DNA from: Thalia democratica | Lineage: Eukaryota | DNA: 64,000 nt | Direction: 5' to 3' | NCBI GenBank assembly: GCA_965202585.1 | Contig: CBDBBG010000089.1 | Span: forward strand, 1 to 64,000 | In this document: one piece after another, positions 5,635 through 62,132 of the stretch | Numbering within the stretch: position 1 is the stretch's first letter | Layout: each line of letters opens with the position of its first letter | The notes under the pieces: model-generated | The model's database searches: none | What the model was told of the DNA's origin: nothing | Seen by the model: the letters and a program-made list of their open reading frames with translations, nothing else | Made by a program: the position numbers and the translations under genes

Positions 5635-6490
5635 TTAGATTCTACAATTTCGTCTACTAGTTCGATTCTTGTTAAAAACATGATTGCAGATAAGACATTT
5701 GTTGCGATCTTAAAACAACTCATCTACACATGTTTGGCACAAATAATAACTTTCGGGACAGTCCAGACGGACCATTTCGTTTTCATGGTGTTCAAAGCAA
5801 ACCTTACACTGGTGTTTCAAATGAAATCGTACTTTAACAATCTGTTGTTGTAACCTAACCTGCACTTCAACTTTTTCTTGTGATATTGTTGTTGAAGTAA
5901 TTGCTGCAGACGCTTCGGGAATTTTAACATACGTAAGTCTTCATCCTCATCATCTCCAATTGCTATCTTATCAGGTTGCATCGGCTCTCTTAATTCTTGA
6001 AGTTCTGGCAAAATGTGTTCATTGGCTTGGTATACTATTTGTTGTAATTGTTGCTGCATACGCTCTCGAAGCCTACTCTGATAATTCAGATCAACTTCAC
6101 GCTGCGGTTTTAACTCTTGCTGTTCTTGTAGTAAAAACCAGTAGTTTTTGTAGTGTTCGATCTACTATTTGTCTAGCATTTACCTTCTTGTCGTTGTTCC
6201 GGACCTTGTGCAACATTATCAATTACGTCATTGAAGTTTTGTTGTTTTTCTTTTTCCAGTCGATTATTTCGTAATTCTTCTTCAAGTCCAACTCCTATTG
6301 GTTCATTTTCTTGTTGTTGTTCCGGATCTTGTGTAATAACATTAACTACGTTATTAGGATTACGTTTTTGCTGTACTTCCTGCTGAATATTTTGTACTTT
6401 TTCTTTGAGACCAACTCTTATTGGTTTATTTCGTTGCTGTTCCTTATCTTGTACAACATTTTCTACTACATCAGGATTCTCTTGGTCCAT
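5635..6490 (-). pseudogene. Disrupted RING-finger gene of the VRLDC family, with a Q/E/N-rich repetitive N-terminus
   Basis: ATG at 6490 in the context acaacaATG; track ORFs 6490-6173 and 6059-5817. A third frame (codons from 5820) reads LKHQCKVCFEHHENEMVRLDCPESYYLCQTCVDELF*DRNKCLICNHVF and ends at TAA 5637-5635. In-frame TAA at 5712-5710, His ligand replaced by Tyr, and frame discontinuities near 6180-6130 and ~5885. Confidence 0.78.
6190..6490 (-). repeat. Coding tandem repeat, about 2.4 units of 40-41 aa (~120 bp)
   Basis: VVENVVQDKEQQR-NKPIRVGLKEKVQNIQQEVQQKRNPNN / VVNVITQDPEQQQENEPIGVGLEEELRNNRLEKEKQQNFND / VIDNVAQGPEQRQE. Confidence 0.8.
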
Positions 6491-7789
6491 TGTTGTTGAT
6501 TTTATTTTTTTTATGTAAAACTGTAGACGAGTATAACAAATATTACAAAAGTGTTTAGTAAACTCTTCTACAACAATTTAAGTATATTTAAAAAAAAGCT
6601 AATTGAATTTTTTGAAAGAATAATAGAAAACTATGATATTTTTTTTACTTTACAAAAAAAAAATTAACCTTTTTAATTTATTTTATATAAAACTTATTTT
6701 TTATACAAAAATATTAACAAGATTTTGAATACTTATTTTCTAAGATAATAAGAATTTCATATAGATAAAGTGTAGTTTTTGATTTTTTCTATACAATTTT
6801 TAATTAAACCGTTTTAAAATATTCCTTGGAATTAAAAAAATTATCTATACTTCTAAATATATTATAAATATTTCTATTTCCTCAAATGATAAAGGCTTTT
6901 GAGTTTTAATAAATCAACAGTAAGTAAAACAAACTCTGAAAATAAACGTAAATGTTCCATACGAATATTAAATTAAGTTTTATAAAGGTGTTCTTAATTT
7001 AAACTTCTGATTTAACATGACAAAATAAATTTAGACTGGTCCTTAGCATTACAAAAGTTATGTTAAGTTTTAAATTTTAGGTGTTTGTATAATATGAAAC
7101 AACAGTCTACTAAGCACTTTTAAGAACAAATAAGGATTTTCAAAACAAAAACTGTAGTACAAAATTACCTTCATAAAGAGGCTAGATAAGTTTGTAATCT
7201 ATACAACAATAGTTCGATATCAGTTCGTAAAAAATTAAAAAAATAAATACTGATAATAAACTAAGGTTAAAAAAGTAGTAACTAAGTACATTAACATGTT
7301 CCAAGTCAGCTGGCATATCTAAAATTATAAAAATTTATATTTATATTTAATATTTCAATTAAGCTAAACTCAAAGATAAGACATATTGGTTACGTGTTCC
7401 ATAAGTTTGTTTATAACATTAAAATAAGTTTTAACAAAAATGTTACAAATCAAAATTATAAATGTTTAAAATAGGTTCTAATTTACAATAGAGTTCTAAA
7501 AGCATTATGACATAGTTTATAGAAAATTATTATTACTTTTAGGAAACATTAACATTAATTTAATTTATTACGTATCTTTTGCACTAGGATATTTGTACTA
7601 TTTAAACAATATTTAAAGAAATCAATTTAGTTTTAATTTATCATCTCAAAATCCTTCACAAACCTTTTTTGTTGCACATAACACACATACTTTTAGTTCA
7701 AAAAGCACATTAAATATTTAAAACTATTAAACATTTTAAGCGTGAGTGAGGTATTTTAATTTCTATGCATAATTTGATCCTTTTAAAAC

Positions 7790-8770
7790 AAACTGTTTTT
7801 AATGCAAGAAAAAATATTGCTTTAGTGTTAATTCTAAAATGAATTCTTATAGCTTTTAACTTTATTAATGAATAATTTTATTTTTTTTCATTACTTAGAT
7901 TAAAAGTTCCAAAAAAACATTTTTTTAAGGGGCCCTGATAAAATTCGAACCCAATCCAAAAGGTTTTTTTTTAATTTAAAGGCAAAGAAGCATTCTCTAA
8001 AATTAAAAAAAAGTTAGCTTTAAAGACAAGCTAAACAATCGGATCTAAAAGTTGAACTTGACCAACTAAATTTAGTGATCAAAAATAATCACCAGCGACA
8101 AATGTTATGTTTTTTTTTGATTTATGCCTCTTATTTTCAGGTAACGTAGTATTTCATTTACAAACCTCAATTTATGTGAGTCTAATTATATATGTATCGG
8201 ATCCGTAAACTAGATGACTATTTTTAATCAAGATCCACAGAATTCATTATATGTTTGAACATCTTTTTCATGTATAACAGTAGACTTTATTCTTATAAAA
8301 GTTACTCAGTTTGATTATGAACATAAATCGAAGCAATCCTACTATTTTAGCAACCGTTTTATTAACTAATTGACGGTTACAGGACAGTCGGAATTAGGAA
8401 ACTTTAAACTCTTGTTAATAAAACTGCTTAGAGTGCGAGATAAAAATACTATTTGATATAATGAAGAATATTAATATCCTAAAGTCTTACAAGTAACAAT
8501 ATTATGCAAAAAACATACTTTAAAAATAGTTTGTTAAAACAAAAACTTAATAATCACTAAAAATAGTCATATGACTATAAATTTCAAAACGTTAACCTCT
8601 TTAAAAATGTGTGTTTAAAACAAATCAAATAATAAAGGTTTAACAATAAAGATAATAGTGGTGAAAAAAAAATATTATCAAATAGATAGCTCACAAAATA
8701 TCAGAACTATCAGAACTTTAACTGTCAGAATTTTAGTCGTCTGGGACCTAAACTAACATAGTTGTATTCT
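7790..8770 (+). repeat. Dispersed repeat family, copy 1 (probable non-autonomous element or old duplication)
   Basis: Aligns by eye with 12395-12985 (same strand; shared ggggcc..aaattc.aaccc, gtgatcaaaaa..atcaccagc and gaagcaatcctact) and with 22835-23560 (opposite strand). Confidence 0.75.
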
Positions 8771-8951
8771 TAAGTGAGTAAAAAGTTTTACGTGTTTAAT
8801 AAAGATAAATGTTATTAAAACAAATATCATTTTTGTTATAAGTTCTAGTTTATTGTAAAGACATTTAAATTCAATCTTTTAGACTAAAACAGAGTCTTAA
8901 AGTAAATGAAATTAAAACCTTTGCCTGGAAAATAATATATATATAGCATTT

Positions 8952-9146
8952 TTACAATTTTGTAATGCTTTGTAGTGCTCGATTTACTATTTGTCTTACA
9001 TTTACCTCTTGTCGTTGTTCCGCATCTTGTGCAACATTATTAACTACGTCATTGGAGTTTTGTTGTTCTTCTTCTTCCAGTCGAATGTTTCGTAATTCTT
9101 CTTCAAGTCCAACTTCTATTGGTTCATTTTCTTGTTGTTTGTCCAA
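8952..9146 (-). pseudogene. Partial duplicate of the Q/E/N-repeat region of the 5.6-6.5 kb RING gene
   Basis: QQENEPIEVGLEEELRNIRLEEEEQQNSNDVVNNVAQDAEQRQEVN aligns with QQENEPIGVGLEEELRNNRLEKEKQQNFNDVIDNVAQGPEQRQE. The nucleotide match covers ~8960-9145 vs ~6140-6325. It begins at TTG and no RING follows. Confidence 0.8.
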
Positions 9147-18811: not shown

Positions 18812-19492
18812 TTAAACAAGTATCCACTGTCTCTTCTCAAAGGTATATCTACAGTTAGGACAAGTCTTATGATCAGCAAACCATCTTTCAATACAATTTT
18901 TACAAAACACGTGCTTTCCAGTGCAGTCGAGACGCACCATAGTCATTCCAACTTCAACATCTTCAAGACAAATCCCACATTCACCAGAGAATGACTCGTC
19001 GGCTTCAAATCGGTCAAATTCCTGGATCCTCTCCAAGCTGAGACCTCTCCTGCGGTTCTGAGCTACACGTGGTACGTTGTTTCCATGCTGCCCACTAGCG
19101 GTTATTTGATTATCGAACAGTTGTATCATCGACTGCATTTCATAGTTCAGTTCGATTTTTTCCTGCATGACGTCAGCCTGCTCCTGCAGCTCCCTTTCAA
19201 ACTGTTCGAGTTTGGCGCAGTCTTGTTCCAAACTTCTGATCACAGACAAATAAGATGATGATGATGATGTCATAAAGGAAAACATACTGTGTGAGTTTTC
19301 GTGAATTTTTCTTCTGTAGTACGCTATACTTGTTTGCTTTTCTATTTTTGTTCTTATGATACGATTTAGATAAAACCTTGTTAGTCGGGGCACAAGGTCC
19401 TCTAGAACGTGCCAGTTGTTGTATGACTCTAAAGTGAACCAATGATTGTAAAGCCGCTGAAGATCACGCTCTATTATAGTTTCAACAGTGAC
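18812..19492 (-). CDS. RING-finger protein (coiled-coil + C-terminal RING with C-x3-H spacing), probable E3 ligase; terminal exon, 5' start unresolved
   Basis: The frame is open upstream of the track GTG to an acceptor ttttcaag| at 19493/19492 (VTVETIIERDLQRLYNHWF...). RING: C-x2-C-x14-C-x3-H-x2-C-x2-C-x10-C-x2-C (CGICLEDVEVGMTMVRLDCTGKHVFCKNCIERWFADHKTCPNC). All eight ligands and the Trp are intact. Confidence 0.88.
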   Translation of the reverse strand, partial: VTVETIIERDLQRLYNHWFTLESYNNWHVLEDLVPRLTRFYLNRIIRTKIEKQTSIAYYRRKIHENSHSMFSFMTSSSSSYLSVIRSLEQDCAKLEQFERELQEQADVMQEKIELNYEMQSMIQLFDNQITASGQHGNNVPRVAQNRRRGLSLERIQEFDRFEADESFSGECGICLEDVEVGMTMVRLDCTGKHVFCKNCIERWFADHKTCPNCRYTFEKRQWILV

Positions 19493-23560: not shown

Positions 23561-25476
23561 TAATATATTAAAACTACTCCCTTAGTTTGTGTCTTTTGTT
23601 AATTTATGTAAAGGAAATTTTTTAAAAGTCAATTTTTATTTAGCATTAAGACAAATAAATTAAAAAGCTATAAATTGCCTAGCATATAAACAATTTAAAA
23701 CAAATTTTAATTATTATTTGATTAATAAAAGCTAGCTAAGTTAAAATAAGGTTTTATTATGAAAACTGATTAAACATTAAATAATAAATACTTGATTTGT
23801 ATGATAAATTTTTTTGTTATTTTTTAAGTTAAATTTCTTGTGTAATACTCCATTAAACAAAGTTTCGAAAAAAACTACATTTTATATCGGAAAAAGGTTA
23901 ATAGAGTTATATAGAAACATGAAAGTATCAGCAACATAATTTTTTTTAAATTTTGTTTTCAATTTATAGCCGAAAATATAAGCGGTAGCTGTAACAAATT
24001 TATAAACAGACTAATTAAATACTAGTTAAAGTTGATAGTTTTGTTTTTTACTAATGATTGTTTAAACTTGTTAGTCAGTTTTTCCGCTAATTTATTTAAA
24101 TAAACGTTTTGTTTAGTTTAAAATTAAAGAGTAGTATATTTAATACTAATTGAATTAAAAGACAAATGATAAACTATGTAAATTATTCTCAACAGTAGAT
24201 ATTAAAAATATATATATTTTATGCATTATCATTGGCTACTTATCTGTACAATATAATCGGTTGTATTACTTTGAAAAACGAAAAACAAATATATACTGTT
24301 TATTGAACGACAAAAAGCGATACAAAAGTTTGGTCCAAGGTCCTAGTGTACGAAAAAATCTTCTGGTTGTAAAGTCGTACACTACATGCTTTTCAATTTC
24401 TTACGTGCTAAAAAATTATGTTTTTAAATCTGAACTTTTAAACTTTAAGAAATAAAATAATCAATAAAGAATAAATTGAAGAAATAAAAATAAAAATAAA
24501 CGAAAATTAATTAAGTTATTTACTTAAAAAAAAAAAATATTTATGATGTAGTCTTAAACTTGTCTAAACAGATAAAAATAAAAGTACATGCGAAGCCTAA
24601 AACTTAAACTAATAAAACAAGAAGTAGATAACATTTTTAGACTTAAAAAATTTACTTCTATTTTATTTACAAAACAATAAAAACAATACATGAAAATACT
24701 AAAGAATAGAAAATTGTAATTATTTAAAAGAATAAAAAAATTGTAATAAACTGAAATATTTTTACGTTTTTTATCAGTATTTTATGGTAAAAGCTTAATT
24801 TAATTTTTCAATAAATGATTGAAATATTAAAGATGTCTATACATGAATAGACCTTAATATTGCTTATTTTTAAAACTTTTAGTTATTTAGTTTTCAAACA
24901 AAGAACTTATATATATATTTTACTTTATTTTTATTAACTTATATTAAAAGGCTAAGTCTTACTAACTTCGCTTTTTATAAAAAAATTTTTAACATTAAAA
25001 TACTTTATTCAAAATTTGAATTTTTAAATAAATATTTTTCGTTAATAGATATTATTACCAATATATGGTTTTAAAAACTTCAATCTAATTCTAGGTAAGT
25101 TTTAACTGTTTTTTTTTCATTAGTAATAAAAATCTTAGATGTTTAAAATAATTGATATTTTTATTTAGGCTTTGATAATCTGTTGTTTTCTATCAAATTA
25201 TTTCATATATTTTTTATTTTTTTAAAGCATTGTTTCATATAACTAGTTAGTTAAGTTTTAAATTTAAGTTGGTAAAATTATAATTGTGCAAAACTTCCAT
25301 GGCTTATAAATTGAAAAATAGCTGTAGCTGTTAAGTAAGGGTGATGATGTACAAAGGTATGAGATATGTTTTATATTCATAACTGTATTTATTTTCTTAT
25401 GTTAGTTATAAAATATATTTCGTATTTTTTGCTTTAAAAGGTTGCAATCAAAGTTCTCGACTTAAAAAGGAGAATG

Positions 25477-28400
25477 ATTCAATGATAAATTTTTAAAATT
25501 TTATTACAATACAATGTTTCACTCGTTTAAAAAAACGAGATCTTCAGTTGTTTATAATTTGTAAAAATTTATGTGATAACAAGTAGGAAGAAATTAGGCT
25601 AAACTTGAAATAAAAGAAGTTAAAAAGAAAAAATGTATAACAAAAACTGAGTAAATCTAATTAAAACCTATAGTTTAAAGTTACTAGCGTATGATGATTT
25701 TAATGTTGCTAGACTAAATTTAGGAAAATGCACGTTACTTAATAATTATACAATCTTAAAAATTAAACAAATAAAATAAAAAAATAACAATAAAAAATAA
25801 TTATACTAACATTTAGTAGCCTTGTGAAATCTGTAGATAACTAACAAAGAAAAACATCTCTTTAATTAAACCTTTAAGTTAAGTTTACTCGTTTAAAAAA
25901 AAAAAGTTTGGCCTATGTATTATGACGTAATTATATATTGGTTTAAATACTTGTACAAATTAAAATAGATATTTTTCTATCAAAACGCTCTTAAGTTTTG
26001 AATAAAGCTTCCTAAAGTGTATACAAGAGCATATTAACCCGTTCCTTTTATTTAAAGATGTTTCCCCGTCAGCGTTCGCTATTTCCATTTTTTCATAGGA
26101 GCAGGTCCTGCAGATTCTCTGCGGTTTCCTTATGTGTCCGATGTGGTGTAAAATTTCCCATTTGATGTTGTAGTTAGTGTTGTTGCGTTTCAGCTTCCAA
26201 ATATACTTGGGTAGTTCGGTTCCGTTCTCCTTGTAAATTTTTATATCTCTTATGTGCTACACCACCTTTTCTTGAAAGTTCCTCCTGTGCTTCCAACGTA
26301 TTGCTTTAATTATTTTTTCGTCGTGACCGTAGCTTTATAGATAAAATTCTTAGTTAGGCATTTGTTTTTTAGCGGGCATAAATTTTTGTTTCTACAAATA
26401 CATAGTGACTCTCCTTTGTCAGTATTTTTAGTTTTTTCTGCATTAATTAAAGTTTTTTGTTTTGTCCTTGGATTAGCATTTTTATGTTACTCATGCAACT
26501 ATACGCTAACTTACAGTTGCTTTTATTTATTAACTTGTTCAGACTGTTGTTCTGATTAAATGCTTGTTGATTAATTCAAAAAACATTTTCCTATGTTTGT
26601 TTTTACTGATTCGCAAAATGGTGGGTTGAAATAAATTATTTTTCTTTTTCTGTTTATTTTCTTTTTCTGTTTGTTAAAGTGTTCCTTATAAGTCAGTTTA
26701 TGTTTAAAATTTGATTTGTCTAAAGCGTTTTGGTATGTGTATGCATTTTGATCAAAATATTTTTGTTTTTAGGTAATTTAATCAGTCTATTTTCTATCAT
26801 TGCCGGTAAGTTCTTTTAATAATTTTAGGATGGTTAGAGTTTCTATTAATGTATCTTATTTCTGTGTTTTCTTTTTGGTAGCGTTTAAATAAGTTTTTGA
26901 AAGGTCTAATGTTATATCTAAAAAGTTGCATATAGTTGCACCGGTGTCTATCGTTATTTTAAAACCTTTTTTTTTATTGTTTTTTTCTTTTTATTTTCTA
27001 AATCTTGGTTGTTTTTTGGTTGGATAATTGCAAGGCCGTCGTCTCTATACAAACCGATCTCTTTAGTATCATAAAGAGATTCAAGCTTGCTCAATGCATA
27101 TAGCCCGATTAAATCGCATAACTCGGCGCCGAAGAAGGAGCCCATGGGAACGTCGAATAGTTGTTGTTATCTTTTTTGATCCAGGTTTTTTTGTTAAAAG
27201 TCAAAATTGTTTTGCAGGTGTGCTTAATTAATTTAATGTCCCTGTCTTCTATTATGGTGTAATTTTTGCAAAGTTTATAGCATTAGTTAAATGATTTTCA
27301 GTGATACTGGGGTAGAAATTCACAATATCGAAGTTTATAAAGCATTTTTTTGATTTAAATTGTACATTATTGAACCATTCGATTACTTCAAATGAGTTTT
27401 TTCACTGGACCAATCTTGACGCGTATCTTATTTTCGTCACAGCTCTTTCTAAGATGTTTTTGCTTATCCTCCCAAGCTCGTTTTTGTCTGGGTTTAATAG
27501 TCTGCACTCAACATTAAAGGGGAAATTGTTTCTTGTGATCCTTTACTGTTATAAAGGCTTCCGAGGTTGAGAACTTAGGTAATTTTTTGTTTTTGTATTT
27601 TCTGTCGGTGATTAATTCTTGTGACTCGGTATTTATTTGTTAGATTAGGTTTTTGTTTGAAGTTTTGTAAGTTTTAGTTATGTTGTTAGTTAAGAGTTTC
27701 TTGTAGTTGCTTGGGTTTGTTTGGTATAGGTTTCTTGTTTTAATGTTAACTATGTAATTACAAAAACTTATGCCCGCTAAAAAACAAATGCCTAACTAAG
27801 AATGTTATCTATAAAGCTACGGTCACGACAAAAAAATAATTAAAACAATACGTAGGAAGCACAGGAGGAACTTTCAAGAAAAGGTGGTGTAGCCACATAA
27901 GAGATATAAAAATTTACAAGGAGAACGGAACCGAACTACCCAAGTATATTTGGAAGCTGAAACGCAACAACACTAACTACAACATCAAATGGGAAATTTT
28001 ACACCACATCGGACACATAAGGAAACCGCAGAGAATCTGCAGGACCTGCTCCTATGAAAAAATGGCAATAGCGAACGCTGACGGGGAAACATCTTTAAAT
28101 AAAAGGAACGGGTTAATATGCTCTTGTATACACTTTAAGAAGCTTTATTCAAAACTTAAGAGCGTTTTGATAGAAAAATATCTATTTTAATTTGTACAAG
28201 TATTTAAACCAATATATAATTACGTCATAATACAATAGCCAAATTTTTTTATTTAAACGAGTAAACTTAACTTAAAGGTTTAGTTAAATAGATGTTTTTT
28301 CTTTGTTAGTTATCTACAGATTTCACAAGGCCACTAAATGTTAGTAGAATTATTTTTATTGTATATTTTTTTATTATTTGTTTAAGTTTTAAGATTGTAT

Positions 28401-40691: not shown

Positions 40692-41098
40692 CAAGGTTTC
40701 CCAATTTGTTTTTTTTAATTACTCTTTTTATAGATTTCATAAAAAACTACTATTAAAAACGCATAAGACCTTTTTTTTTATCTTCATTATCAACTCCAAA
40801 TATCTGGTGTTAGTGTGTAAGTTTCAAGTTTTGACCTTGTGGCTATCCCTTATACAGCTTTTGTCTCCCTAAATTTCATAAATTTTTTCTTTGAAATCTA
40901 GTATAAGTTTCAACGTTACCTTTTAAAATCGCCCATGACCAGTTTATTATTGCTTTTGATCATCAATTTCAGAATGCCAAGTTTAAATCTCAATTTATGA
41001 CCGCATAGACCCCCCTTTATCATCTTTGCTGCTCATGGCCCCCAAAATTTCTATAATGGCTTCGAAGGGGGCAACTTGGCCTAGTTTGGGAAACCCTG
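40692..41098. mobile_element. hAT-type MITE (407 bp)
   Basis: TIRs caaggtttcccaa / ttgggaaaccctg; 8-bp flanks tattcaat / tattaaat (7/8). Confidence 0.8.
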
Positions 41099-41940: not shown

Positions 41941-42284
41941 CAGGGTTACCAGATGTTTTTGGATTATTTTTTTCCAGGTTTAAAAAAAATTTTTCGTGGT
42001 TTTCAAATAATATTTTCCAGGTTTATAAAACTGCACGTTTACGGGTCTATTTTTAATTTAAAACTTAATTTAGGTAAAAAATATTTTAAAGTTTATTGAA
42101 ATGTGTTTATTATTAAAAAACATTTTTTAAGATGCACAAAATTATTATCTATAAGATACAATTTATGTGTCAAATAGAAATTTTACTATTTTAGTTGTAA
42201 AAATAGCTTAGTATTACAGGTTTGTTTAGCAAAAATTGTCATATTTTAGATTTTTCTAGGATTCTAGTTTTTTTGGAAACCCTG
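41941..42284. mobile_element. hAT-like MITE (344 bp)
   Basis: TIRs cagggttacca / tggaaaccctg; no clear TSD. Confidence 0.55.
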
Positions 42285-42649
42285 TTAAAACTAATTAAAT
42301 AAAAAACATCTAGTAGACAAATATAAAAAAAAATATCAAAAGATGGTATTTAAGCTCTCACATGAAAAAAAAATAATAGCACACAGTTTCTCAAAGAAAA
42401 AAATCAGAGTATTAATTTAAAAATTTTCAAGTTGTTAGACCAAGAAATAAAATCAACATTATTTTAAAATCAACTTTTTCAACTAGAAATATCACTTAAT
42501 TGTCATGCCTATGCAAACCCCTATGATACAAGTTCCTAAATATTTTCTAGATGTATTGGTCATTGCTTCTTATTTATTAATAAGTAATGTCTTTTTCTAT
42601 AATGCTAATAAGATTTAAGAGTCTAATATATATTTAATATGACTTCTTA

Positions 42650-43000
42650 CGATTTAAAATTGGTCACCATTTTTATGACTTATTTGTACTCATATATTGT
42701 CAATATATCTTAACTATTTGGACTTATATTTTATCAGTTCTATTTTGACTTTGTGGACTAGATTTTGTTAGTTCTATAGTGACTTTGTAGAATTAAGATA
42801 TGTAAGTTTTAATTTGACTTAGTGGTCTTAAAGTTTGTCAATTTTATAATTAAGTTTTGGACTTATATTTTCTCAGTTCTATTTTGACTTTGTGGATTTA
42901 AACTTTTTCAATTTTATGGTGACTTTTTAGACTTAGAATTTGTGAGTTCAATAGTCACTTTGTTGACTTGAAATTTATTAGCTGTATAGTAGTTTTATAA
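42650..43000. repeat. ~35-bp minisatellite, at least 8 units, with a 4-unit higher-order period
   Basis: ggacttatattttatcagttctattttgactttgt at 42720 recurs almost exactly ~140 bp later, with diverged units in between. Confidence 0.75.
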
Positions 43001-47653: not shown

Positions 47654-47751
47654 TCATGTTGAAATTAGTAGATGTATTCAATTCAAGAGAAACGCTCAAA
47701 AAAGATTTGATGAAAATATTGATACATTTTTAAAAGAAAGTTGTAAAAAAG
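47654..47751 (+). CDS. Candidate upstream coding exon of the BACK-Kelch gene
   Basis: tttttag|T CAT GTT GAA...HVEISRCIQFKRNAQKRFDENIDTFLKESCKK G|gtaaga. A strong phase-1 donor compatible with the phase-1 acceptor at 54345. No in-frame ATG was found. Confidence 0.35.
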
Positions 47752-48753: not shown

Positions 48754-49479
48754 AAAAAATGTTTAGACTTTTACAAATAAATTGAAATATCTTTAAACTA
48801 TAATTAAATGTTTGCCTGATGGTGCAGGAATTCTTATAATGATTTTGAAATCTTTTTAAGTTAAAAATTTCAAAAAATCAAGAACTAACTTTGTGGCCAA
48901 CAGATATACAAAAGTAAAACAATTTAAATAAAAAATATTTAAATACTATTAAACGATAAAAGAGAAAATTGCCATGTGGTGTAGTTGTATAAAGATGATT
49001 TTGAAAATTCTCTGAATTGAATTTTACAAGATTTAAACCCAGTTGGTTGACACATAAACAAATAATATAAATGCTTAAGTATAAACACAACATTATCATT
49101 AAACAGCATAACACAAAAGCTTCACACAACATTATTATATACAATAAACTAACTAAAATAAAACTTAAGTGATTATATTGGACATTTTTTTAAGTAAAAT
49201 TGTACTTACTAGTTCAAAAACAATACTGTATGAAAAGTTATTTAAACTAAGTTACAATTTATAGTTGGAACCAGTGGCGTCGCGTGGTATTTTTTTTAAG
49301 TGGTGCAGAATTTAAAAAAAAATCCCCTACTTTAAAACTCTTTTTTATCTTAAATAAAGACTTTTTTCTACAACAATTACATTAAATTGCTAATGTAACC
49401 TGGGAAATTTTGTTGAGAAATAAAACATTTATATTTTCAAAAAAATTATGTAAGAAAAAAGGTAAATACTTTGAAAATT

Positions 49480-50720
49480 TAAGTAAATATAAGAATAAAA
49501 GAAAAATAATTATTTTAAGTAATTTACAAGACTCGAAAAATGTTAGCTTACTTATGAGTATTAATTTTAAGAAGGCTTTAAAATTTAAACTCACAGTAGA
49601 AAAAAAATTGGACAAAACAAATTTTTATTATATTGAAAAACACAGCAACTTTAATAGTTTTTCTTTTGACTCAACTTAATTTAAAAAATATTTGATTAAA
49701 TATCATATTAAGAATGGTTATTTTACTAGTATTTAACTTAACAAAAAAAAGAAATGTCTTATTAGACTTGGCAAGAACATTAAAAAGTCTACAAACAAAA
49801 AAATGTTATGTACACACTGCAAGTTTATTTTAAGTAAAATTTATTAAAACTCAGTAGAAAAAAATTGCTTATTTACTGATGAATATTGAAAAAAATAAAC
49901 GAGTATCAACTTATAACTAATGAAAATTTTTATGTTTGAAAAAAAAACAGCTTGACTACTAAGTTAAAAACACAAAAGTAAAATAAGCAAGCTCATAAAT
50001 ATCAAATTTTACGAAGTCTCTAACTTAAAATTTAGATTAAACAGATTAATATTATAATAAGAAAATACAGCAACTTCAATAATATTATTTTAGCCTCAAC
50101 TTTAGTTAAAAAGTATTGGATTAATTAAATATCAAACTATTAATAATTGTTTAACTAATATTTAATAAAAAAAAGTCTAATTATACTTGGCAAGTAAATT
50201 AAAAAGTCTACAAACAAATAAAATGTTGTGTAGAAATTGAAAATTTTTTAAAGAACAACTTACATTACTCAGTAAAGAAATTTAAAATTCATTTATGATA
50301 AAGAAAAAAAATGTTAAATAAGTAAAAAACTCAAAAAGAAAACAAGCAAACTAAATAATATTAAGTTTTACAAAGGCTCTAAAGTTAAAACTAAAAGTAG
50401 CTTACAATTTAGATATAAGAAACTTATATTATAATAAAAAACACAGCAACTATAATAATATTTCATTTTAGCTTCAACTTTACTTGAAAAATATTGGATT
50501 AAATACCAAACTAAAAATAATATTTTTACTTATTTTTAACTAAACAAAAAAAAGGAATGCATAATGAAGCTTGGCAAGTAAATTAAAAAGTTTACAAACA
50601 AAGAAAAATTTATGTACAAATTACAACTTTTTAAAGAAAAACTAAACTTGCTTAGTACAGAAAATAGTTACTACTGAATGTCTACCTAAAAAATTAAATC
50701 TAAACTTTAACTTTGCAAAC
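49480..50720. repeat. About 3 diverged tandem copies of a ~400-bp unit inside the inner hAT
   Basis: cttggcaag..ttaaaaagt(c/t)tacaaacaaa at ~49767, ~50185 and ~50570; cagcaact..aata...tcaact at ~49643, ~50068 and ~50443. Confidence 0.75.
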
Positions 50721-50736
50721 ATAAATACTTAGACTC

Positions 50737-51220
50737 TTACTTTTCACCTTTGTAACTAAAATTCATTCTTCTCTCCTTTTGGATGATAAATTTCTCCATC
50801 ACCTCTTCTTTGAAACTAGTACAGTTTTTAAGTAAGTCCCTACCAATCGAAATTACACTCAAAGAATTTAATCTTGACTGACCCATGATGTTTCTCAAAA
50901 ATGTTTTTATCCTTTTCAAAGATGAAAATGTTCTTTCAGCGTCTACACTAGTCATGGGAATAGTTATCAAAGTTCTAAGAAGCTTTGTAGTTTCGTTAAA
51001 TATTTTAGTCAGGTTATGTTCTTCAAAATATAACAGTATTTTCACTAAATAATCCTGATGCATGTGAATAAAATGTTTTCAGTTCTCTTTCTAACTGTTT
51101 ACATTCAACTACAGGATAACACTTCTTCACTGTTTCTATAAGTTCTAAAAGAAAACAGGATTTATAAACAGTAAAATATTTTGCCAACAATAACGGTGAA
51201 GTTCTTAAATTGTTCTAACT
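50737..51220 (-). pseudogene. hAT transposase C-terminal dimerisation domain remnant (ZMYM1-like)
   Basis: LLRTLITIPMTSVDAERTFSSLKRIKTFLRNIMGQSRLNSLSVISI...KERRMNF; the upstream frameshifted segment reads ELIETVKKCYPVVECKQLERELKTFYSH. Confidence 0.9.
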
Positions 51221-51273
51221 ATACAGAGTAAACTAATAAATAATTTCAATATTGAAAAAAAAAAATATAAAAG

Positions 51274-51444
51274 CAAGGTTGCCACTCTTTGAGTCAAAAT
51301 AAACTGTCCTGAGTGACCTTAAAATGCCCTGAGTCACCATGTGTTTTTGAGAAAAATTCAAAATACCCTGAGTTTCCCTGAGAATTTTTAGAACTTAAAA
51401 CATCATTAAGTTTCACTGAGTACCCTGAGTGTGTGGCAATCCTG
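51274..51444. mobile_element. Small MITE with repeated internal cctgag motifs, nested in the inner hAT
   Basis: caaggttgccac ... gtggcaatcctg; related degenerate pieces at ~44416-44590 and ~52735-52920. Confidence 0.6.
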
Positions 51445-54344
51445 AATATAGCTAAAAAAAAGATTAAAATAATTTCAAAAACAAAGAGTTTCATTTTATC
51501 AATAATTTTAAGGACATGAAGATTTTTTTTTAAATATATTTTTACTATCAAGTTTGAAAACAACTTAACTTTTGCTACACCTGAATATAAGCTTTGCTTT
51601 TAAGGAAATAGGGAGGATGAAACACTTTCTTCACAATTTGATCTTATTTTATGAAGTTTTTACTAAGCTACAAGATGCTTTTTACAGATTTAAAAAATTC
51701 AAAATACTTTTTTATATATAGCCGGTCAAAGTCGAAGGCAACAAAAGGTTCCTTACAGGTGGCACAAACTAAAACAGCGTTTAAAAAAAGTGTTTTACCC
51801 CCCTTTTATGCCCTTAACATATACTTTAGAATTATTTTACTGAACTTATTTTATACAGTTTTAATTTAACTGCATGGCTTATTTTATCAATATAAAAAAT
51901 CATATTAATTTTTAAGATACAATGGTAATTCACAGTCAGAGATACAAAAGAGTCCTTAAAAATATAATATAAACTCAAACAACAAATAAATCAAATCACT
52001 AAAATCATATCTTTTTTATAAGTTGGCCTCAAAATCTTTAGATGTTTCTTTTATAAAATAAAACAATTTGCTAAAATAGATATTTAAAAAACTAAGAAAA
52101 AAAAGTTATAACGAAAGTAATATTTTTTGTATATATAAAAATATATATTGATAGTTAAAAATTTAAAACTTCTCTTCAACAAAAGTATAAAATTTTATAA
52201 AGATTAGGATGAAAAAGTTTGATAAAAATTGCTTTAAAAATGATGGAGAATATAGGTTTTTAGTAAAATTGTATTTTTTTGCTGTTTTAGTTTGCTCCTT
52301 GTATAATAAATCAATGTAATTTCTGGCCTGACCGGTTGTATCTAAAAGTTTAATTGGAAGTAAGTTTATTAAAGAGTAACTATTAGCTTTCTGAAAAACT
52401 TAGAATAAGAACAACATGTAGAAAAGTGCCTATACACCCTCCCCCTTACCCGTCACTATTTTGCACAATTTTTTTCAACAAATTTTAAGATTTTTATTAA
52501 CTTTTTTTCTAAACTTAATGTTTTTTGTTGGAGGTTAAAAATTCAATACTTTTTTAAGGGTATCTTTTCTGTATTTAAATTTAATTTATTTTTCATTTTG
52601 ATGACAGTATTTTTCTCAAGAGCTCAACTTTTTAAAGTTTAGTTGGTGAGGCTGTCGAACTTTTCAAGAAATTTAAAGATAATTAATAAATATGTAACCA
52701 TTATAACAGTAAAAAACTGGTTAGTTAGTTTTCATGTGGCCATAGGGGTAAAACACTTATATTTTAACTTAAAATATGCTTGTTATTTTCAGAGTAAAAA
52801 ACTAAAACTGCTTTAGTCAGCCTGAATATTTTCTAATTTGGTCAGTTTCAATTTATCTTAGGTCATCTTGAGTTTTTTTAACATTTTTAAGTTATCCTGA
52901 TTATAAGGCAAGGCAACCATGTTTCAACAACTTTATCTAAAATTTTTGCTTTGTTTATGAAAAAACTAAACCAAAAGTCAAATAAAGTAGACTAAAATGT
53001 TAAACTACTCTAAGTAATTAAAGTTTCTTGGGGGGTCAGACCAATATTTTAAGTTTAGGCTATTTACTTTATCTAAATATGTGACTGTTTCAATAATTAT
53101 ACTTTTTATTTAATATAAATCTAATTTATTTTCCTGTAAGAGTAAACTAGAAGTTTATAATAAACTGCTTAACATTTTTTTAAGAACTCAAGCTTTGCAT
53201 TTAAATATAATTTAATTAAATATTTTATTAACTTTATGATTACGATAATCAGTTATAGTTAAGTTTATGTATGCAGATTAAAATAAAAAATCAAATTTCT
53301 TAGATTTTGGTTATTTAAGTTTCTTATCTTTTTTTTTTCAAAATATTTAATTTATGACAAGTTTAAATTTAAAAAATTATGTAAGTACATAAACTCAAGT
53401 TTAATTCTTTGCAGTAGCTTAGCTTTGTTTTTATTTTATGTTTACAATAGCTTGTAGATGATACTTAAGCATGTCCTGTTTTAGGGAATTTTCAACTTAG
53501 CTTACTTACCTCAAGATATTGATTTTGCGGTAATTCTTGAAGAAAATTTGCTTTTTTGAGTTCATTTGCGGCAGTCAGCTAAGAGTTTGCAGCAGTGAAG
53601 TGGGCAAAATGGTCGTTTTCTAAATTGGAGTTTTAAAAGAGATTTCGTTCTAAAAAATAACTAAAATATTATAGATACTTAATTTTTTCCTAACAAAATT
53701 TCCAGGTGGTGCAGTTGCGGCAGTGCAACACCCCACGCGACGCCCCTGGTGGGAACTAAAGCATCTTAGTAAAAAGTTTCCTAGAAAGAAAATGCTACTT
53801 TAAAACTTTTACCTATTATGACGTCACAATTGAAAATTTATTTATAATCTATTTCAGCTGGGCAAAATAGAGCATTTTTTGTTAAGGAAACTTTTTAATC
53901 TTTCAGTGTTATAAATTCAACATTCGTTATTAAAAGTTTATCAAAGAACCAAAAGAAAGTCAATAAACAACGTTTTTAGTGTTATTCTAAGATTTTTTTT
54001 TCTTTTTTCTTTTCTTTTTTTTTCAGGGGGTTTACAAGAAACAGGAAACCAATCAAAACACGCCCCTGACTGAGACTAAAACTTTTTGTTTAAATTTCAA
54101 CCTCTAGTGTTTTTAGAGTCATTTTTACATTAAGTTTACTTGAATAAAGAAATAGAAGTTACAAAAAAGGTTTATTAAACGTATATTAGCCTAACAAAAA
54201 CTAATTTCATTTGAGATTAAAAAAAATATATTTAAGTTGGTGCATGTAATAATTTAATACTTTACGCTATCTTTCTTGATAAGTAAATAGTTAACATAGT
54301 ACAAATAACCTGTAACTAAGATTATACAATTTAACATTTATTAG

Positions 54345-55756
54345 GTAAAACAAAGATAGAAGAAATTGAACTAGCAGTAGCTCTAAATCGCAATAAGTTG
54401 ATACTGAGTGAAGGTGAAAGTTTAAAAATTTCGGATTTTATAAAAGAAAAAGTGAACAAAGACAATGTTCTGACATTTCATAGTTTAGGAAAGCTTTACA
54501 AACTACCCACTACTTTTAAGTCATCCTTGCTTTGTATAGAACGTTGTTTTCCAATGGTAGTTGAAACTCAAAACTTTTTGTATTTAGATTTTAGTATTGT
54601 TGCAAATATACTTGATAGTTCTGAATTAAATATTCACTCAGAAATTGAAATATTTAATGCAGTTATTGCTTGGTTGGAACACAACAGTGAAGAACGTATC
54701 AAATATGCAAAACAGTTGTTACTAAAATTCCGTTATAGATTATTATCAGAAGATGCTTTAAAACACATATTTAATTGTAATTCAATTTTTACTAAAAACC
54801 ATGAGTGTATTAAAACATTAAAAAAAGTAGTACTGAACCAGAAAAATTTTTATTCGGCAAAAACAGATAAAATCTACACAAGTAGGTATTGTAGCCAAAA
54901 AAAGTTTAACCTATTATTATATGGTTTCAGCCCTGATGTGTATGGACCTGTAACATATGTACATCAATTTAATGGAAACACATTGAAGTGTTTGAAAGAT
55001 GTTTCTTTAAATACAATTGCGAGAAGAAATTTTGAAGTTGTTTGTACGAAAGGAGAGGTTTACATGTTTGGTGGTCGTAATAACAGTGGTGCTGGACGTT
55101 TATCAATGTCTGTTGTAAAATTGTCACCTCCTACTAATACATGGAATGTAGTAGCTAAAATGTGCGATGAACGTGAATTCTTTTGTGCTTGTGCATTTAT
55201 GGATAAAATATTTATTTTGGGGGCTTTTTACTATAAAAACAATAAGGTAACTAGTTCCTGTTTTCAATTTGATATAAGACAAGACTCTTTTGAAGAAGTT
55301 TCTAGAATGCGTCAACGAAGAATGCATGCAGCATGTGCAGTGTTTCAAGGAAATATTGTTGTTTCTGGTGGAATGAATTATAGTAATAATTTTGGTTTGG
55401 AATCAGTAGAATCATATGATGTAATTTCCAACAAGTGGTCACCAATGCCTAATACGACAAATTTGTACTTTAATCACAACTTAGTTGTGGTAAAAGATAA
55501 ATTGTTTGTTATTGGATATGATCGAAACACTTGTGAAGTTTTTGACAATGTTTCTAAGAATTTTGTTTCTCTTAAGCCTCCACCCAGTATTTGTTTAAAT
55601 AAATCTGTGGCAATAGGTAACAAAATCGTAGTTTTTCAAGAAAAAAGACTTTCAATAATGTGTTACGATGTTAATAAAGATGAATGGAATGAAGAACCAT
55701 GTGAAATAACGAAAAATCTTTATTATTTGTCTTGTGTGAAGTTTCCTTTGTATTAA
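54345..55756 (+). CDS. BACK + Kelch protein (KLHL-like), large terminal exon; N-terminus in upstream exon(s)
   Basis: BACK: ERCFPMVVETQNFLYLDFSIVANILDSSELNIHSEIEIFNAVIAWLEHNSEER. Kelch: GEVYMFGG, NIVVSGG, VESYDVISNKWSPMP. The frame is open upstream of the track TTG to an acceptor tttattag|GT at 54344/54345; no ATG near the start. Confidence 0.88.
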
Positions 55757-57208: not shown

Positions 57209-57308
57209 NNNNNNNNNNNNNNNNNNNNNNNNNNNNNNNNNNNNNNNNNNNNNNNNNNNNNNNNNNNNNNNNNNNNNNNNNNNNNNNNNNNNNNNNNNNN
57301 NNNNNNNN
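57209..57308. other. Assembly gap (100 N)
   Basis: Run of exactly 100 n, probably a placeholder of unknown true size. Confidence 0.99.
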
Positions 57309-60300: not shown

Positions 60301-61421
60301 AGTCTAACATTGTTTATTTAAAGTATTATTAGCTATAGAAAGAAACATTTTCTGGGTAATTAGTGAACTTTAGAATTTAGTTAAACTTAAGCAAATTTTG
60401 TTAGTTATGAATAAATGTTATCATAAAGTTATTATTCAAGTTAACTTTATTGTTATGTGTACATTATCTATTAAAATTTGACTTTAAAATTTCTGTCCTT
60501 TAAAAACTTCAATAAACCATGTTTTGTCTTTGGATTCAAATAAAGTTTGTATTTAAAACTATAATATAAATATTTTTCAAGTATTCAACTTATAAAAGTT
60601 AGTTGTCTGTACTGTAATATAATTTTATACATAAATATTATTTTTATAATCAGTGCTTTTATTCTAACCAAACTTACCCAAAACGAGCATGACGTTGTGA
60701 ATATTTTTTCACACAAATGTTTAAAGTATTAATTTATATTTGTTACATGTTTTAAGTATCGTGTTATAAAGGTTGTACACCTTAATAACTTACGAAACAA
60801 AAACAATCATCATCTATTACAAAAAATATAATGCATACTAAGATATACTGCTTTTTTATTTTAGTCATTACGTTTTATTACATCATAAATTGAACTTTTG
60901 CGGTAAATTTTATACATTTTTTACAAACTTTAGTAATATTAAAATTAGTTATAATAATTAATCTGTTTAGGTATTATTATTTTTTTGTAAAGTTAAAGTC
61001 AATTGAGCTAAAATGAGTACTAAAATATATACTTTTATTCAGCAGTTACAAATTTTGTAAAAATATTCTGTCAAGGTTTTAAACTTTAAAACTGAATATA
61101 AAAATAACCAAAAAAAGCAACCTCATGAAGAAAAACATTTTTTTAACAAGATCTACGTCTTTTTTTATTGATAAACTATTTTTGATTAATATAACTTATA
61201 TAAATCAAAAGTTTATAATAAAAAAACTTTATAATCAAAACTTTGTTGGAATAAATGTTCTTTTTAGTAAAATTGTTGATATTTAAAAAGCAAAAAAAAA
61301 GCTTTAGTTATAAAGTTTTGCTAAAATATAATCTTAAAGCGTAACTTTTTTTATAGATGTTACAATTGTAAAAGTATCTTTCTGTTTTTGTAGGTTTAAA
61401 CATTTTCTTATGGGTTTGTAT

Positions 61422-61429
61422 TATAAATA
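61422..61429 (+). promoter_or_regulatory. Possible TATA box of the RING gene
   Basis: TATAAATA about 47 bp upstream of AAAAATG; weak evidence in such AT-rich DNA. Confidence 0.25.
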
Positions 61430-61475
61430 AAACATTAATAACAGAAAATATTTTATAACAATACAAAGATAAAAA

Positions 61476-62132
61476 ATGTCATATAAATCAATCCTAATCA
61501 TTAGAACTAGTTTAAACAGTTCAAGTATACGCTTAGAAACTAATATAGTCAAAGATGACGGCTTGGCTTGTTTCAAAAATACTAGTTGGTACATGTCTGA
61601 TGAAGAAACCATTTTCATAGAACAAGAATATGACTTTGACTTCCTACATAGTTTCGGCTTGGAACACATGAAACAGGAAATAATCAGAGTTATCAATCAG
61701 TTGAGAGAAAACAATCGAAACAACATTCATCAATCGGTTGAAATTCCCGTGACGTCAAGAGAACTTTCCGAACCACACAGATCGTGCAAAATGAATCAAA
61801 ACGAAGCAACAGGGGAAAATCAAGTTTGCCAGTCTGAGCTACAACAAAAGTTGTCAGCTCTCGACGAAGAAAGTGAGTTGTTAAAACCATTTAACGAAAA
61901 CAAATGCTCAGTTTGCCTGAGTAGCTACAAAGAGATTCTTGATGACAAATTTCATGTAGTCGTTCCATCTTGCGGACACCCTTTGTGTTGTAGCTGTGCT
62001 GATAGAATTTTAGGTAATGCAAAGAAAAAGTGTCCACAGTGCAGGGAAATCATTAAACTTGAATCTTTTAATCCAATGAAATTTAATAGAGATTTAGGGA
62101 TAGACACACAAGATCAAAAGCTATTCTTATAG
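61476..62132 (+). CDS. Intronless C3HC4 RING-finger protein, 218 aa, unrecognised N-terminal domain
   Basis: AAAAATG start; RING C-x2-C-x18-C-x1-H-x2-C-x2-C-x11-C-x2-C (CSVCLSSYKEILDDKFHVVVPSCGHPLCCSCADRILGNAKKKCPQC); AATAAA at ~62203. Confidence 0.9.
   Translation: MSYKSILIIRTSLNSSSIRLETNIVKDDGLACFKNTSWYMSDEETIFIEQEYDFDFLHSFGLEHMKQEIIRVINQLRENNRNNIHQSVEIPVTSRELSEPHRSCKMNQNEATGENQVCQSELQQKLSALDEESELLKPFNENKCSVCLSSYKEILDDKFHVVVPSCGHPLCCSCADRILGNAKKKCPQCREIIKLESFNPMKFNRDLGIDTQDQKLFL

What the first reader, a model, noticed from the sequence alone, without database searches (positions are those of the whole stretch)
5635..62132. Window-wide cluster of ubiquitin-ligase modules in birth-and-death turnover
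Seen: every recognisable non-TE coding sequence is RING or Kelch: five RING loci (5.6, 18.8, 29.2, 40.4, 61.5 kb), a duplicated fragment (9 kb) and three Kelch propellers (32.4, 37.7, 54.3 kb). They are intron-poor, highly diverged, and mix intact copies with pseudogenes. Known: rapidly turning-over E3 adaptor clusters (nematode F-box/MATH-BTB, fish finTRIM) are linked to pathogen defence. Inference: this may be an analogous lineage-specific immune or proteostasis locus in which RING and Kelch modules get recombined.
Basis: partly seen in the sequence, partly recalled or inferred. Interest (0 to 1): 0.7.

Follow-up and report, generated by a model that had tools for sequence, protein, structure and literature searches.

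The report
Mixed patch of fast-turnover ubiquitin-ligase genes
This stretch of an AT-rich marine animal genome holds a dense mix of live and dead RING and Kelch ubiquitin-ligase genes, but it is one ordinary patch of several genome-wide gene-family expansions, not a special locus where the modules are being recombined.

Summary
The window has five RING loci, one duplicated fragment and three Kelch propellers. The only other Pfam-recognisable ORF belongs to a hAT transposon.

The picture needs four corrections.
1. The RING at 40.4 kb and the Kelch at 37.7 kb are exons 1 and 3 of one intact three-exon RING / coiled-coil / Kelch gene. It has at least 45 close paralogs elsewhere in the genome.
2. 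The eight loci come from about six different families. Each has its nearest relative on another chromosome, so this is a mosaic of dispersed duplicates and not a locally grown array.
3. Turnover is real. The RINGs at 5.7 and 29.2 kb are dead. The BACK-Kelch gene at 54 kb has a private 5-bp frameshift in a small 5' exon, and a hAT element sits in its intron. Its 98%-identical duplicate on C5 carries different lesions.
4. The RING at 61.5 kb is joined to the rest only by the assembly gap. Its flanks resemble C1, while the left side resembles C5.

Nothing indicates in-place RING/Kelch recombination, because the fusion is old and family-wide. An immune role is untested: no RNA run was found. The scan had already found these families on other DNA of this genome.

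The parts
5713..6577 (-). Dead RING gene. It has an acidic/Gln-rich 41-aa tandem repeat followed by a RING remnant, and is broken over three reading frames.
   Evidence: ORF pieces lie at 6176-6577, 5820-6161 and 5713-5940 in different frames. The RING remnant is 34-41% identical to the 18.8 and 29.2 kb RINGs, lacks the His ligand and stops before the last Cys pair.
9007..9144 (-). Orphan fragment: one copy of the internal repeat of the 5.7-6.5 kb locus.
   Evidence: It is 91% identical to 6186-6323 and 76% identical at protein level.
18812..19492 (-). Last exon of a small RING gene with a C-terminal C3HC4 RING. The frame is open. The 5' exon was not found.
   Evidence: Pfam zf-RING_2 scores 46.8-48.1 bits. 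The conserved frame starts without an ATG at a conserved YAG|GT acceptor in 5 of 6 copies. The best paralog is C5:14230849 at 82% aa; dN/dS is 0.18-0.42.
25393..28692 (.). High-copy repeat with inverted arms of about 0.9 kb. It is probably a Penelope-like retroelement, judged by eye only.
   Evidence: The arms 25477-26396 and 27753-28671 are 91-98% complementary. Dozens of copies at 93-96% occur genome-wide. There are no Pfam hits.
29237..29440 (-). Dead, truncated RING: only the last ~60 codons of an 18.8-kb-type gene.
   Evidence: It is 55% identical to the 18.8-kb RING. Two of eight zinc ligands are lost, His to Tyr and Cys to Ser.
32443..33456 (-). Intact single-exon stand-alone Kelch gene (337 aa, six blades, no BTB, BACK or RING).
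   Evidence: The AF2 model has pTM 0.78 and Foldseek finds KLHL3, KEAP1 and KLHL7 Kelch domains. It belongs to a family of ~335-aa ORFs, the best only 56-62% identical. dN/dS is 0.46-0.58.
37661..38592 (-). Exon 3 of the RING/coiled-coil/Kelch gene: the six-blade Kelch propeller.
   Evidence: Kelch_1 E=1.6e-46. PDB sequence hits to KEAP1 and KLHL12 reach E~1e-35. The AG acceptor is conserved in all 9 copies and dN/dS is 0.40-0.61.
39124..39576 (-). Exon 2 of the same gene: a second helical segment, itself an old duplicate of the exon-1 coil.
   Evidence: The acceptor ACAG| and the donor GT are conserved in 9 of 9 copies and both introns are phase 1. It is 32-37% identical to residues 55-152 of exon 1. 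dN/dS is 0.29-0.49.
39799..40456 (-). Exon 1 of the same gene: an N-terminal RING-H2, a ~70-residue helix and a Cys/Ser/Asp-rich tail.
   Evidence: zf-RING_2 E=2.7e-11. All eight ligands are invariant in alignment A1. AF2 predicts a helix at 86-156 with pLDDT 79-87. At least 44 full-length paralogs are 83-89% identical. dN/dS is 0.20-0.38.
37301..42979 (-). The 5.7-kb duplicated unit that carries the RING/coiled-coil/Kelch gene.
   Evidence: It is 83-85% identical to units on C4:99.70 Mb, C5:9.5-9.9 Mb, C5:76.47 Mb, C8:7.06 Mb, C64, C270 and C728.
47656..47751 (+). Exon 1 of the BACK-Kelch gene. It is 30 codons + 1 nt in paralogs. Here a private 5-bp tandem duplication near 47674-47683 breaks it.
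   Evidence: The ATG and the GTAAGA donor are conserved in 4 paralogs. The window copy reads to a stop at codon 26, whereas the C5:14.27 Mb duplicate is intact at this point.
49272..53748 (.). hAT transposon (4,477 bp) inserted in the intron of the BACK-Kelch gene.
   Evidence: It has CAG(T/G)GGCGTCGCGTGG terminal inverted repeats and 8-bp target duplications GTTGGAAC and GTGGGAAC. The empty site is at C5:14270668-75. A hAT dimerisation domain lies at 50737-51063. Dozens of copies at 93-95% exist.
54345..55756 (+). Exon 2 of the BACK-Kelch gene. The ORF is open and encodes BACK plus six Kelch repeats, with no BTB.
   Evidence: BACK E=1e-18 and Kelch_1 E=1.2e-22. The TAG|GT acceptor is conserved and in phase with exon 1. 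dN/dS is 0.79-0.81 against intact paralogs. It is 98.0% identical to the C5 duplicate, which has a 1-bp deletion and a nonsense codon; the changes are 19 nonsynonymous to 6 synonymous.
57209..57308 (.). Assembly gap (100 N) in non-coding DNA. It is the only link between the 61.5-kb RING and the rest.
61476..62132 (+). Intact single-exon small RING gene (218 aa, C-terminal C3HC4 RING).
   Evidence: All eight ligands are present. It is 94% identical at protein level to C1:40091358. The CDS is 96.9% identical against 91-93% for the flanks. dN/dS is 0.17-0.54. The family has hundreds of ~225-aa ORFs.

Best explanation
The window is a heterogeneous patch inside an E3-rich part of a genome in which several unrelated families of small, intron-poor ubiquitin-ligase-type genes have each expanded to hundreds or thousands of copies.

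**The families**
- RING-only genes of at least two types
- stand-alone Kelch genes
- BTB-less BACK-Kelch genes
- fused RING / coiled-coil / Kelch genes

**How the patch arose**
- Dispersed segmental duplication of 3-6 kb units, transposon insertion and independent decay of copies built the patch.
- Duplication, decay and insertion are shown. The order of events and the mechanism of dispersal are inferred.

**State of the loci**
- Four loci look functional:
  - the three-exon RING/coiled-coil/Kelch gene
  - a stand-alone Kelch
  - two small RING genes
- Four loci are dead or dying:
  - two RING relics
  - one fragment
  - the BACK-Kelch gene with a broken first exon

**Inferred mechanism**
- The fused gene most likely encodes a self-contained ligase. 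From its domains:
  - the RING-H2 would recruit a charged E2
  - the long helices would pair two chains, as in TRIM proteins
  - the Kelch propeller would hold the substrate
- The BTB-less Kelch proteins cannot dock on cullin-3 in the usual way. They would act as binders, decoys or partners of something else.
- No biochemistry or expression data exist for any of these genes.
For: **Domains and intactness:**

**One gene, not two modules**
- The introns are GT..AG and both are phase 1. The joined frame is open for 680 codons.
- Splice sites are conserved in 9 of 9 copies. Exons are 87-95% identical against 70-89% for introns.
- All three exons have dN/dS below 1.
- A Kelch motif lies about 2.5-3.3 kb downstream of the RING on the same strand in more than a dozen paralog pairs, including subfamilies only 40-55% identical.
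- P0092, an uninterrupted 507-aa ENA ORF, aligns to exon 1 (E=5e-18) and to exon 3 (E=2e-41).

**Mosaic origin**
- The nearest paralogs lie on C5, C1, C4 and C2.
- The window's own Kelch domains are 26-28% identical to each other.

**Turnover**
- Window 43.7-57.2 kb is collinear with C5:14256966-14274098 at 90-97% identity. The two differ by a 4.5-kb hAT insertion here and a 7.9-kb insertion there.
- The two BACK-Kelch duplicates carry different lesions.

**The density stops:** the remaining 40 kb of the contig holds only one decayed Kelch fragment.
Against: - There is no RNA evidence for any gene here. The only runs holding the sequence are DNA contigs.
- 'Intact' means an open frame, correct ligands and dN/dS below 1. 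It does not mean shown expression.
- The 5-bp frameshift in the BACK-Kelch first exon could be an assembly error. I could not check it against reads.
- The first exon of the 18.8-kb RING gene was not found.
- Whether contig C98 is a paralogous segment or a diverged haplotype of C5:14.26-14.27 Mb is unresolved.
- Genome-wide counts are first-look candidates and truncated top-150 lists, not a census. The claim that such mixed patches are common rests on examples only:
  - C4:99.70-99.88 Mb
  - C5:69.6-70.1 Mb
  - C1:39.5-40.2 Mb
  - C8:27.4-29.6 Mb
Confidence: 0.8

Rival explanations
1. One reading: this is a dedicated, lineage-specific immune or proteostasis locus in which RING and Kelch modules are shuffled in place to make new ligases.
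For: - A RING-Kelch fusion gene does sit in the window.
- Density is about 20-fold over the genome mean.
- Live and dead copies are mixed.
- Relatives outside the genome are only unnamed short contigs.
Against: - The fusion is old and family-wide. It is not specific to this locus.
- No chimeric junction or hybrid copy was seen.
- Every element's nearest relative lies elsewhere in the genome.
- The RING of the fusion is only 41% identical over 44 aa to the neighbouring RING-only gene. Its Kelch is 26-28% identical to the neighbouring Kelch genes.
- There are no expression or infection data.
Confidence: 0.08
2. Neutral 'genomic drift': the families expand and decay at random in a permissive, repeat-rich region. 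There is no adaptive drive, and most copies have little or no function.
For: - About half the loci are dead.
- The BACK-Kelch gene has dN/dS of 0.8-1.0.
- Transposons of similar age (93-96% identical copies) fill the spacers.
- The same argument was made for plant F-box genes (PMC3030570).
Against: - The open copies show purifying selection, with dN/dS of 0.2-0.6 on the fusion gene and both small RING genes.
- The coding sequence is better conserved than its flanks: 96.9% against 91-93% for the 61.5-kb RING, and 98.0% against 95.7% for the BACK-Kelch pair.
Confidence: 0.3
3. Part of the apparent cluster is an assembly product: C98 is an unplaced scaffold that joins unrelated repeat-rich pieces, or it is a diverged second haplotype of C5.
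For: - The 100-N gap separates a left part resembling C5:14.2 Mb from a RING block resembling C1:40.09 Mb. The right flank has no match in the next 10 kb of C5.
- Identity to C5 is 90-97% over 43.7-57.2 kb.
Against: - Four RING loci and all three Kelch genes lie on the uninterrupted 57-kb left part, so the cluster does not depend on the join.
- Identity to C5 is uneven: about 85% around the 18.8-kb RING against 95-97% at 54-57 kb. There is also an inversion. These fit paralogy better than allelism.
Confidence: 0.15

Closest known systems
TRIM / finTRIM ubiquitin ligases (RING, B-box, coiled coil, C-terminal binding domain; PMC3137616, PMC2657112)
   Same: - The fusion gene has an N-terminal RING, then a long helix, then a C-terminal substrate-binding domain.
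- It belongs to a large multi-copy family with live and dead copies, like fish finTRIM.
   Different: - No B-box was found by Pfam in exons 1 or 2.
- The C-terminal domain is a Kelch propeller, which is not among the C-terminal domain types I know for TRIM proteins (my knowledge).
- There is no sequence relationship beyond the RING.
- No immune link has been shown.
KLHL / KEAP1-type BTB-BACK-Kelch adaptors of cullin-3
   Same: - The Kelch domains are of this type: PDB sequence E~1e-35 to KEAP1 and KLHL12, and fold TM 0.73-0.77.
- The 54-kb gene keeps the BACK domain.
   Different: - None of the three genes has a BTB domain.
- One carries a RING and coiled coil instead. One has only a 30-residue first exon before BACK. 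One is the bare propeller.
Nematode and plant F-box and MATH-BTB families (PMC8120010, PMC4091423, PMC3030570)
   Same: They are lineage-specific, tandemly and dispersedly duplicated families of substrate-recognition parts of ubiquitin ligases, with many pseudogenes and rapid turnover.
   Different: - The domains differ.
- Here several unrelated families are interleaved in one patch.
- Some members carry the catalytic RING themselves, so they need no cullin scaffold.
RFWD3-type ligases (RING, coiled coil, WD40 propeller)
   Same: Both have a single chain with a RING followed by a beta-propeller. An RFWD3-like protein (P0156) was a weak hit of the exon-1 search.
   Different: - The propeller is WD40, not Kelch.
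- RFWD3 is a single-copy conserved gene (my knowledge).
- The match covers query residues 4-114 at E=2.5e-6.

Membership tests
RING-type E3 ligase domain | Eight zinc ligands in C3HC4 or C3H2C3 order and spacing | tested here: met
   Met for 18.8, 40.4 and 61.5 kb (regex; Pfam). Not met for 5.7 kb (His and last Cys pair lost) or 29.2 kb (His to Tyr, Cys to Ser).
TRIM (tripartite motif) | B-box zinc finger between RING and coiled coil | tested here: not met
   No zf-B_box hit at E<=0.01-0.05 in the exon-1 or exon-2 ORFs.
TRIM (tripartite motif) | Coiled coil after the RING | tested here: inconclusive
   AF2 predicts one uninterrupted helix at residues 86-156 with pLDDT 79-87. Pairing of two chains was not modelled.
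KLHL (BTB-BACK-Kelch) cullin-3 adaptors | N-terminal BTB/POZ domain | tested here: not met
   No BTB hit in any ORF. The conserved first exon of the 54-kb gene encodes only 30 residues. No coding conservation was found further upstream.
KLHL (BTB-BACK-Kelch) cullin-3 adaptors | BACK domain | tested here: met
   PF07707 E=9.9e-19 in 54398-55756 only. It is absent from the other two Kelch genes.
KLHL (BTB-BACK-Kelch) cullin-3 adaptors | Six-blade Kelch propeller | tested here: met
   Pfam and PDB sequence hits. The fold of the 32.4-kb gene matches whole KLHL and KEAP1 Kelch domains.
Birth-and-death multigene family | Repeated duplication with some copies kept and others turned into pseudogenes | tested here: met
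   There are hundreds of paralogs per family. The window holds four dead or dying loci. The BACK-Kelch duplicate pair carries independent lesions.
Birth-and-death multigene family | Copy number and content differing between individuals or species | not testable with these tools
   No second genome or population data were available. Only one study holds the sequence.
hAT transposon | 8-bp target-site duplication, short terminal inverted repeats, hAT dimerisation domain | tested here: met
   The empty site is in the C5 copy.

The most novel reading that the evidence does not exclude
The fusion gene may act as a 'Rosetta stone'. The many separate RING-only proteins and BTB-less Kelch-only proteins encoded side by side in such patches would then work as split, two-part ligases that pair in trans. 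Their interleaving in the genome would reflect co-evolving RING/Kelch partner pairs that form a diversified recognition system.
Probability: 0.06. Interest if true: 0.8.

Novelty: new variant of a known kind. Interest (0 to 1): 0.45.

Why it matters
Fast-turnover families of ubiquitin-ligase recognition parts are a recurring theme in host-pathogen and self/non-self biology. Examples are F-box, MATH-BTB and finTRIM.

This genome appears to have built such a repertoire from different bricks: RING-only, Kelch-only and a RING / coiled-coil / Kelch fusion that needs no cullin. The window gives a clean, datable snapshot of the process:
- a duplicate pair 2% apart that is dying by different lesions
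- a transposon insertion with its empty site still present in the paralogous copy
- dispersed copies of very different ages

The window also shows that reading RING and Kelch ORFs as separate 'modules' overcounts genes. Its value is as a worked example. The families themselves had already been noted by this scan elsewhere in the genome.

Tried and rejected
**RNA evidence**
- The run search found no RNA library. The two holders are short DNA contigs that collapse the paralogs and show no splice joints.

The origin of the ENA contigs could therefore not be seen.
I therefore could not:
  - make a census
  - search for paralogs of the 5.7-kb relic
  - run a coordinate-only test of the right gap flank

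**Searches that found nothing**
- A BTB exon upstream of the BACK-Kelch ORF: none found, only a 30-codon first exon.
- The first exon of the 18.8-kb RING gene: no conserved block stood out.
- Pfam on about 29 further ORFs found only the hAT domain. The GIY-YIG and reverse-transcriptase look of the 25.4-28.7 kb repeat rests on my eye alone.
- The ESM Atlas gave only generic small RING clusters with low feature sharing.
- Literature searches found no paper on RING/Kelch expansions in tunicates or on a RING / coiled-coil / Kelch family.

**Rejected readings**
- A simple haplotig reading of C98. Identity to C5 is uneven and there is an inversion.
- My first choice of the intron-1 acceptor (39587-39586). 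It is replaced by the one conserved in all paralogs, 9 nt downstream.

- No search or fold was run on the joined three-exon protein. Its frame was checked only inside scripts, and the exons were searched apart by reference.

Full report
**Setting**

The window is the first 64 kb of a 104-kb unplaced scaffold, C98, in an 802-Mb assembly with about 25% G+C. Earlier notes of this scan call the organism a pelagic tunicate. I did not test that.

**Observation**

- Pfam and a ligand-pattern search find complete RING fingers at 18.8, 40.4 and 61.5 kb.
- The RINGs at 29.2 and 5.7 kb are degenerate relatives of the 18.8-kb one, sharing a 'VRLDC' core. They have lost two or more zinc ligands.
- The 5.7-kb locus is also split over three frames.
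- The 9-kb fragment is one copy of a 123-138-nt internal repeat of the 5.7-6.5 kb locus.
- The three Kelch ORFs are real. The weakest by Pfam, at 32.4 kb, folds as a full six-blade propeller matching KLHL3, KEAP1 and KLHL7.
- About 29 other ORFs gave only a hAT dimerisation domain. 'Everything recognisable that is not a transposon is RING or Kelch' therefore holds at Pfam sensitivity.

**The gap, tested first**

- The 100 N at 57209-57308 lie in non-coding AT-rich DNA. They are 1.45 kb after the nearest stop codon and 4.2 kb before the next ORF, so no frame crosses them.
- The left flank is collinear with C5:14270668-14274098 right up to the gap.
- The right flank has no match in C5:14274401-14284400. 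Its RING block is 91-93% identical to C1:40.09 Mb.
- Continuity is therefore unsupported, and the 61.5-kb RING belongs to the cluster only by scaffolding.
Locus L037 runs 67 bases past the last aligned base, and those letters were not printed or used.

**RING at 40.4 kb and Kelch at 37.7 kb are one gene**

A lead from earlier notes made me test this.

- On the minus strand the exons are 40456-39799, 39576-39124 and 38592-37661. They join through GT..AG introns, both in phase 1, into an open frame of 680 codons.
- In eight paralogous copies both donors and the second acceptor are identical. The first acceptor is the ACAG conserved in all copies, 9 nt downstream of my first choice.
- Exons are 87-95% identical against 70-89% for introns.
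- All three exons show purifying selection: dN/dS is 0.20-0.38, 0.29-0.49 and 0.40-0.61.
- Exon 1 has at least 44 full-length paralogs at 83-89% identity. More distant subfamilies reach down to about 40%.
- In more than a dozen cases a top-scoring Kelch motif lies about 2.5-3.3 kb downstream on the same strand. Examples are at C5:9.6-9.9 Mb, C2:69.9-70.0 Mb, C4:99.70 Mb, C7:41.4 Mb, C6:17.6-18.3 Mb and C5:62.4-62.7 Mb.
- An independent public protein, P0092, is an uninterrupted 507-aa ORF on a 4.3-kb ENA contig. It aligns to exon 1 (E=5e-18) and to exon 3 up to its last residues (E=2e-41).
- The exon-1 model shows a RING followed by a 71-residue helix.
- Exon 2 is an old duplicate of that helix.
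- No B-box is present.
- No search or fold was run on the joined protein.

**The other loci**

- The 54-kb gene also has a hidden part. Paralogs share a 30-codon first exon with a conserved ATG and GTAAGA donor, spliced in phase to a conserved TAG|GT acceptor at 54344|54345.
- That gene has a BACK domain and a Kelch domain but no BTB.
- In the window, the first exon carries a private 5-bp tandem duplication that gives a stop at codon 26.
- A 4,477-bp hAT element with an 8-bp target duplication sits in the intron.
- The 18.8-kb RING ORF starts at a conserved acceptor without an ATG, so a first exon exists that I could not find.
- The 32.4-kb Kelch and the 61.5-kb RING look like single-exon genes.

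**Where the copies come from**

- Each element's nearest relative is elsewhere in the genome:

| Window element | Nearest relative | Identity |
|---|---|---|
| Fusion gene | units on C4, C5, C8 and small contigs | 83-85% over a 5.7-kb unit |
| 18.8-kb RING | C5:14.23 Mb | 82% aa |
| 61.5-kb RING | C1:40.09 Mb | 94% aa |
| Stand-alone Kelch | C5:70 Mb and C4:76 Mb | only 56-62% aa |
| BACK-Kelch gene | C5:14.27 Mb | 98% nt in the coding sequence |

- Inside the window the Kelch domains are 26-28% identical. The 61.5-kb RING has no BLAST-level similarity to the others.
- The last duplications range from dS of about 0.02 to about 0.6.
- This is a mosaic of dispersed duplicates from about six families, not a local array.

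**Turnover caught in the act**

- Window 43.7-57.2 kb is collinear with C5:14256966-14274098. The differences are the hAT insertion here, with the empty site in C5, and a 7.9-kb insertion there.
- The C5 copy of the BACK-Kelch gene has an intact first exon but a 1-bp deletion and a nonsense codon in exon 2. The window copy has the reverse pattern.
- Between the two copies there are 19 nonsynonymous and 6 synonymous codon changes, about the neutral ratio.
- Both young duplicates therefore seem to be dying independently.

**Is the density special?**

- Against a uniform background it is about 20-fold enriched.
- The families sit in arrays, however, and comparable mixed patches show up in the hit lists:

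| Region | Families seen |
|---|---|
| C4:99.70-99.88 Mb | fusion gene, 61.5-kb-type RING, stand-alone Kelch |
| C5:69.6-70.1 Mb | 18.8-kb-type RING next to stand-alone Kelch |
| C1:39.5-40.2 Mb | mixed families |
| C8:27.4-29.6 Mb | mixed families |

- The rest of C98 (64-104 kb) has only one decayed Kelch fragment and a receptor-like exon.
- I could not run a proper census.

**Relatives outside the genome**

- Word and full HMMER searches with exon 1 and with the stand-alone Kelch returned only unnamed ENA short-contig ORFs. No named protein was among them.
- No RNA run exists in the index. The two holders are DNA contigs.
- Literature searches found nothing on such a family.
- The comparison families are documented in PMC2657112, PMC3137616, PMC8120010 and PMC3030570.

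**Verdict**

- It is partly wrong: there is no in-place shuffling, the window is not a distinct locus, and one 'RING plus Kelch' pair is a single gene.
- The scan had already described the fusion family, the stand-alone Kelch arrays and the BTB-less BACK-Kelch family on other DNA of this genome.
- This window adds:
  - the mosaic picture
  - the BACK-Kelch first exon
  - the paired-lesion example
  - the single-ORF homolog P0092

Noticed in passing
window 49272-53748: A 4,477-bp hAT transposon with CAG(T/G)GGCGTCGCGTGG inverted ends and an 8-bp target duplication. Dozens of copies at 93-95% identity exist genome-wide. The empty site is preserved at C5:14270668-75.
   Followed up: yes
window 25393-28692: A high-copy 3.3-kb repeat with inverted arms of about 0.9 kb and copies at 93-96% on most chromosomes. 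By eye it carries GIY-YIG-like and reverse-transcriptase-like remnants, so it is possibly a Penelope-like element. Pfam gave no hit.
   Followed up: partly
G000:C10:25055107-25112280: A tandem array with a period of about 1.1 kb. It holds 40 or more 180-aa RING ORFs that all score an identical 54.1 bits, so it is very young or homogenised.
   Followed up: no
window 39124-39576 vs 40001-40171: Exon 2 of the fusion gene is 32-37% identical to the helical part of exon 1. This is an old internal duplication of the coil.
   Followed up: partly
L010 (G000:C5:14229349-14232924): The closest paralog of the 18.8-kb RING gene has AC where the other five copies have the AG splice acceptor. It may be a dead copy despite its open frame.
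   Followed up: partly
P0092 (ENA contig, 4.3 kb): An uninterrupted 507-aa ORF with a RING-H2, a helix and a Kelch propeller, about 30% identical to the window's fusion gene and lacking the exon-2 segment. Its organism is unknown.
   Followed up: partly
G000:C98:100183-100548 (-): A receptor-like exon, judged by eye to be a seven-transmembrane type with a 'GPAGAWCW' motif, at the far end of the contig. It is the only non-E3, non-repeat coding candidate seen on C98.
   Followed up: no
window 8006-11901 vs 12589-12941 and 22685-23925: Old dispersed repeats in direct and inverted orientation (77-85% identical) link the 8-12 kb and 22.7-23.9 kb regions. They are probably decayed repeat copies.
   Followed up: no
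window 37600-40500: In the two DNA runs, summed contig depth is 3- to 10-fold higher over the three exons than over the introns. This mirrors how many paralogs share exon words.
   Followed up: partly
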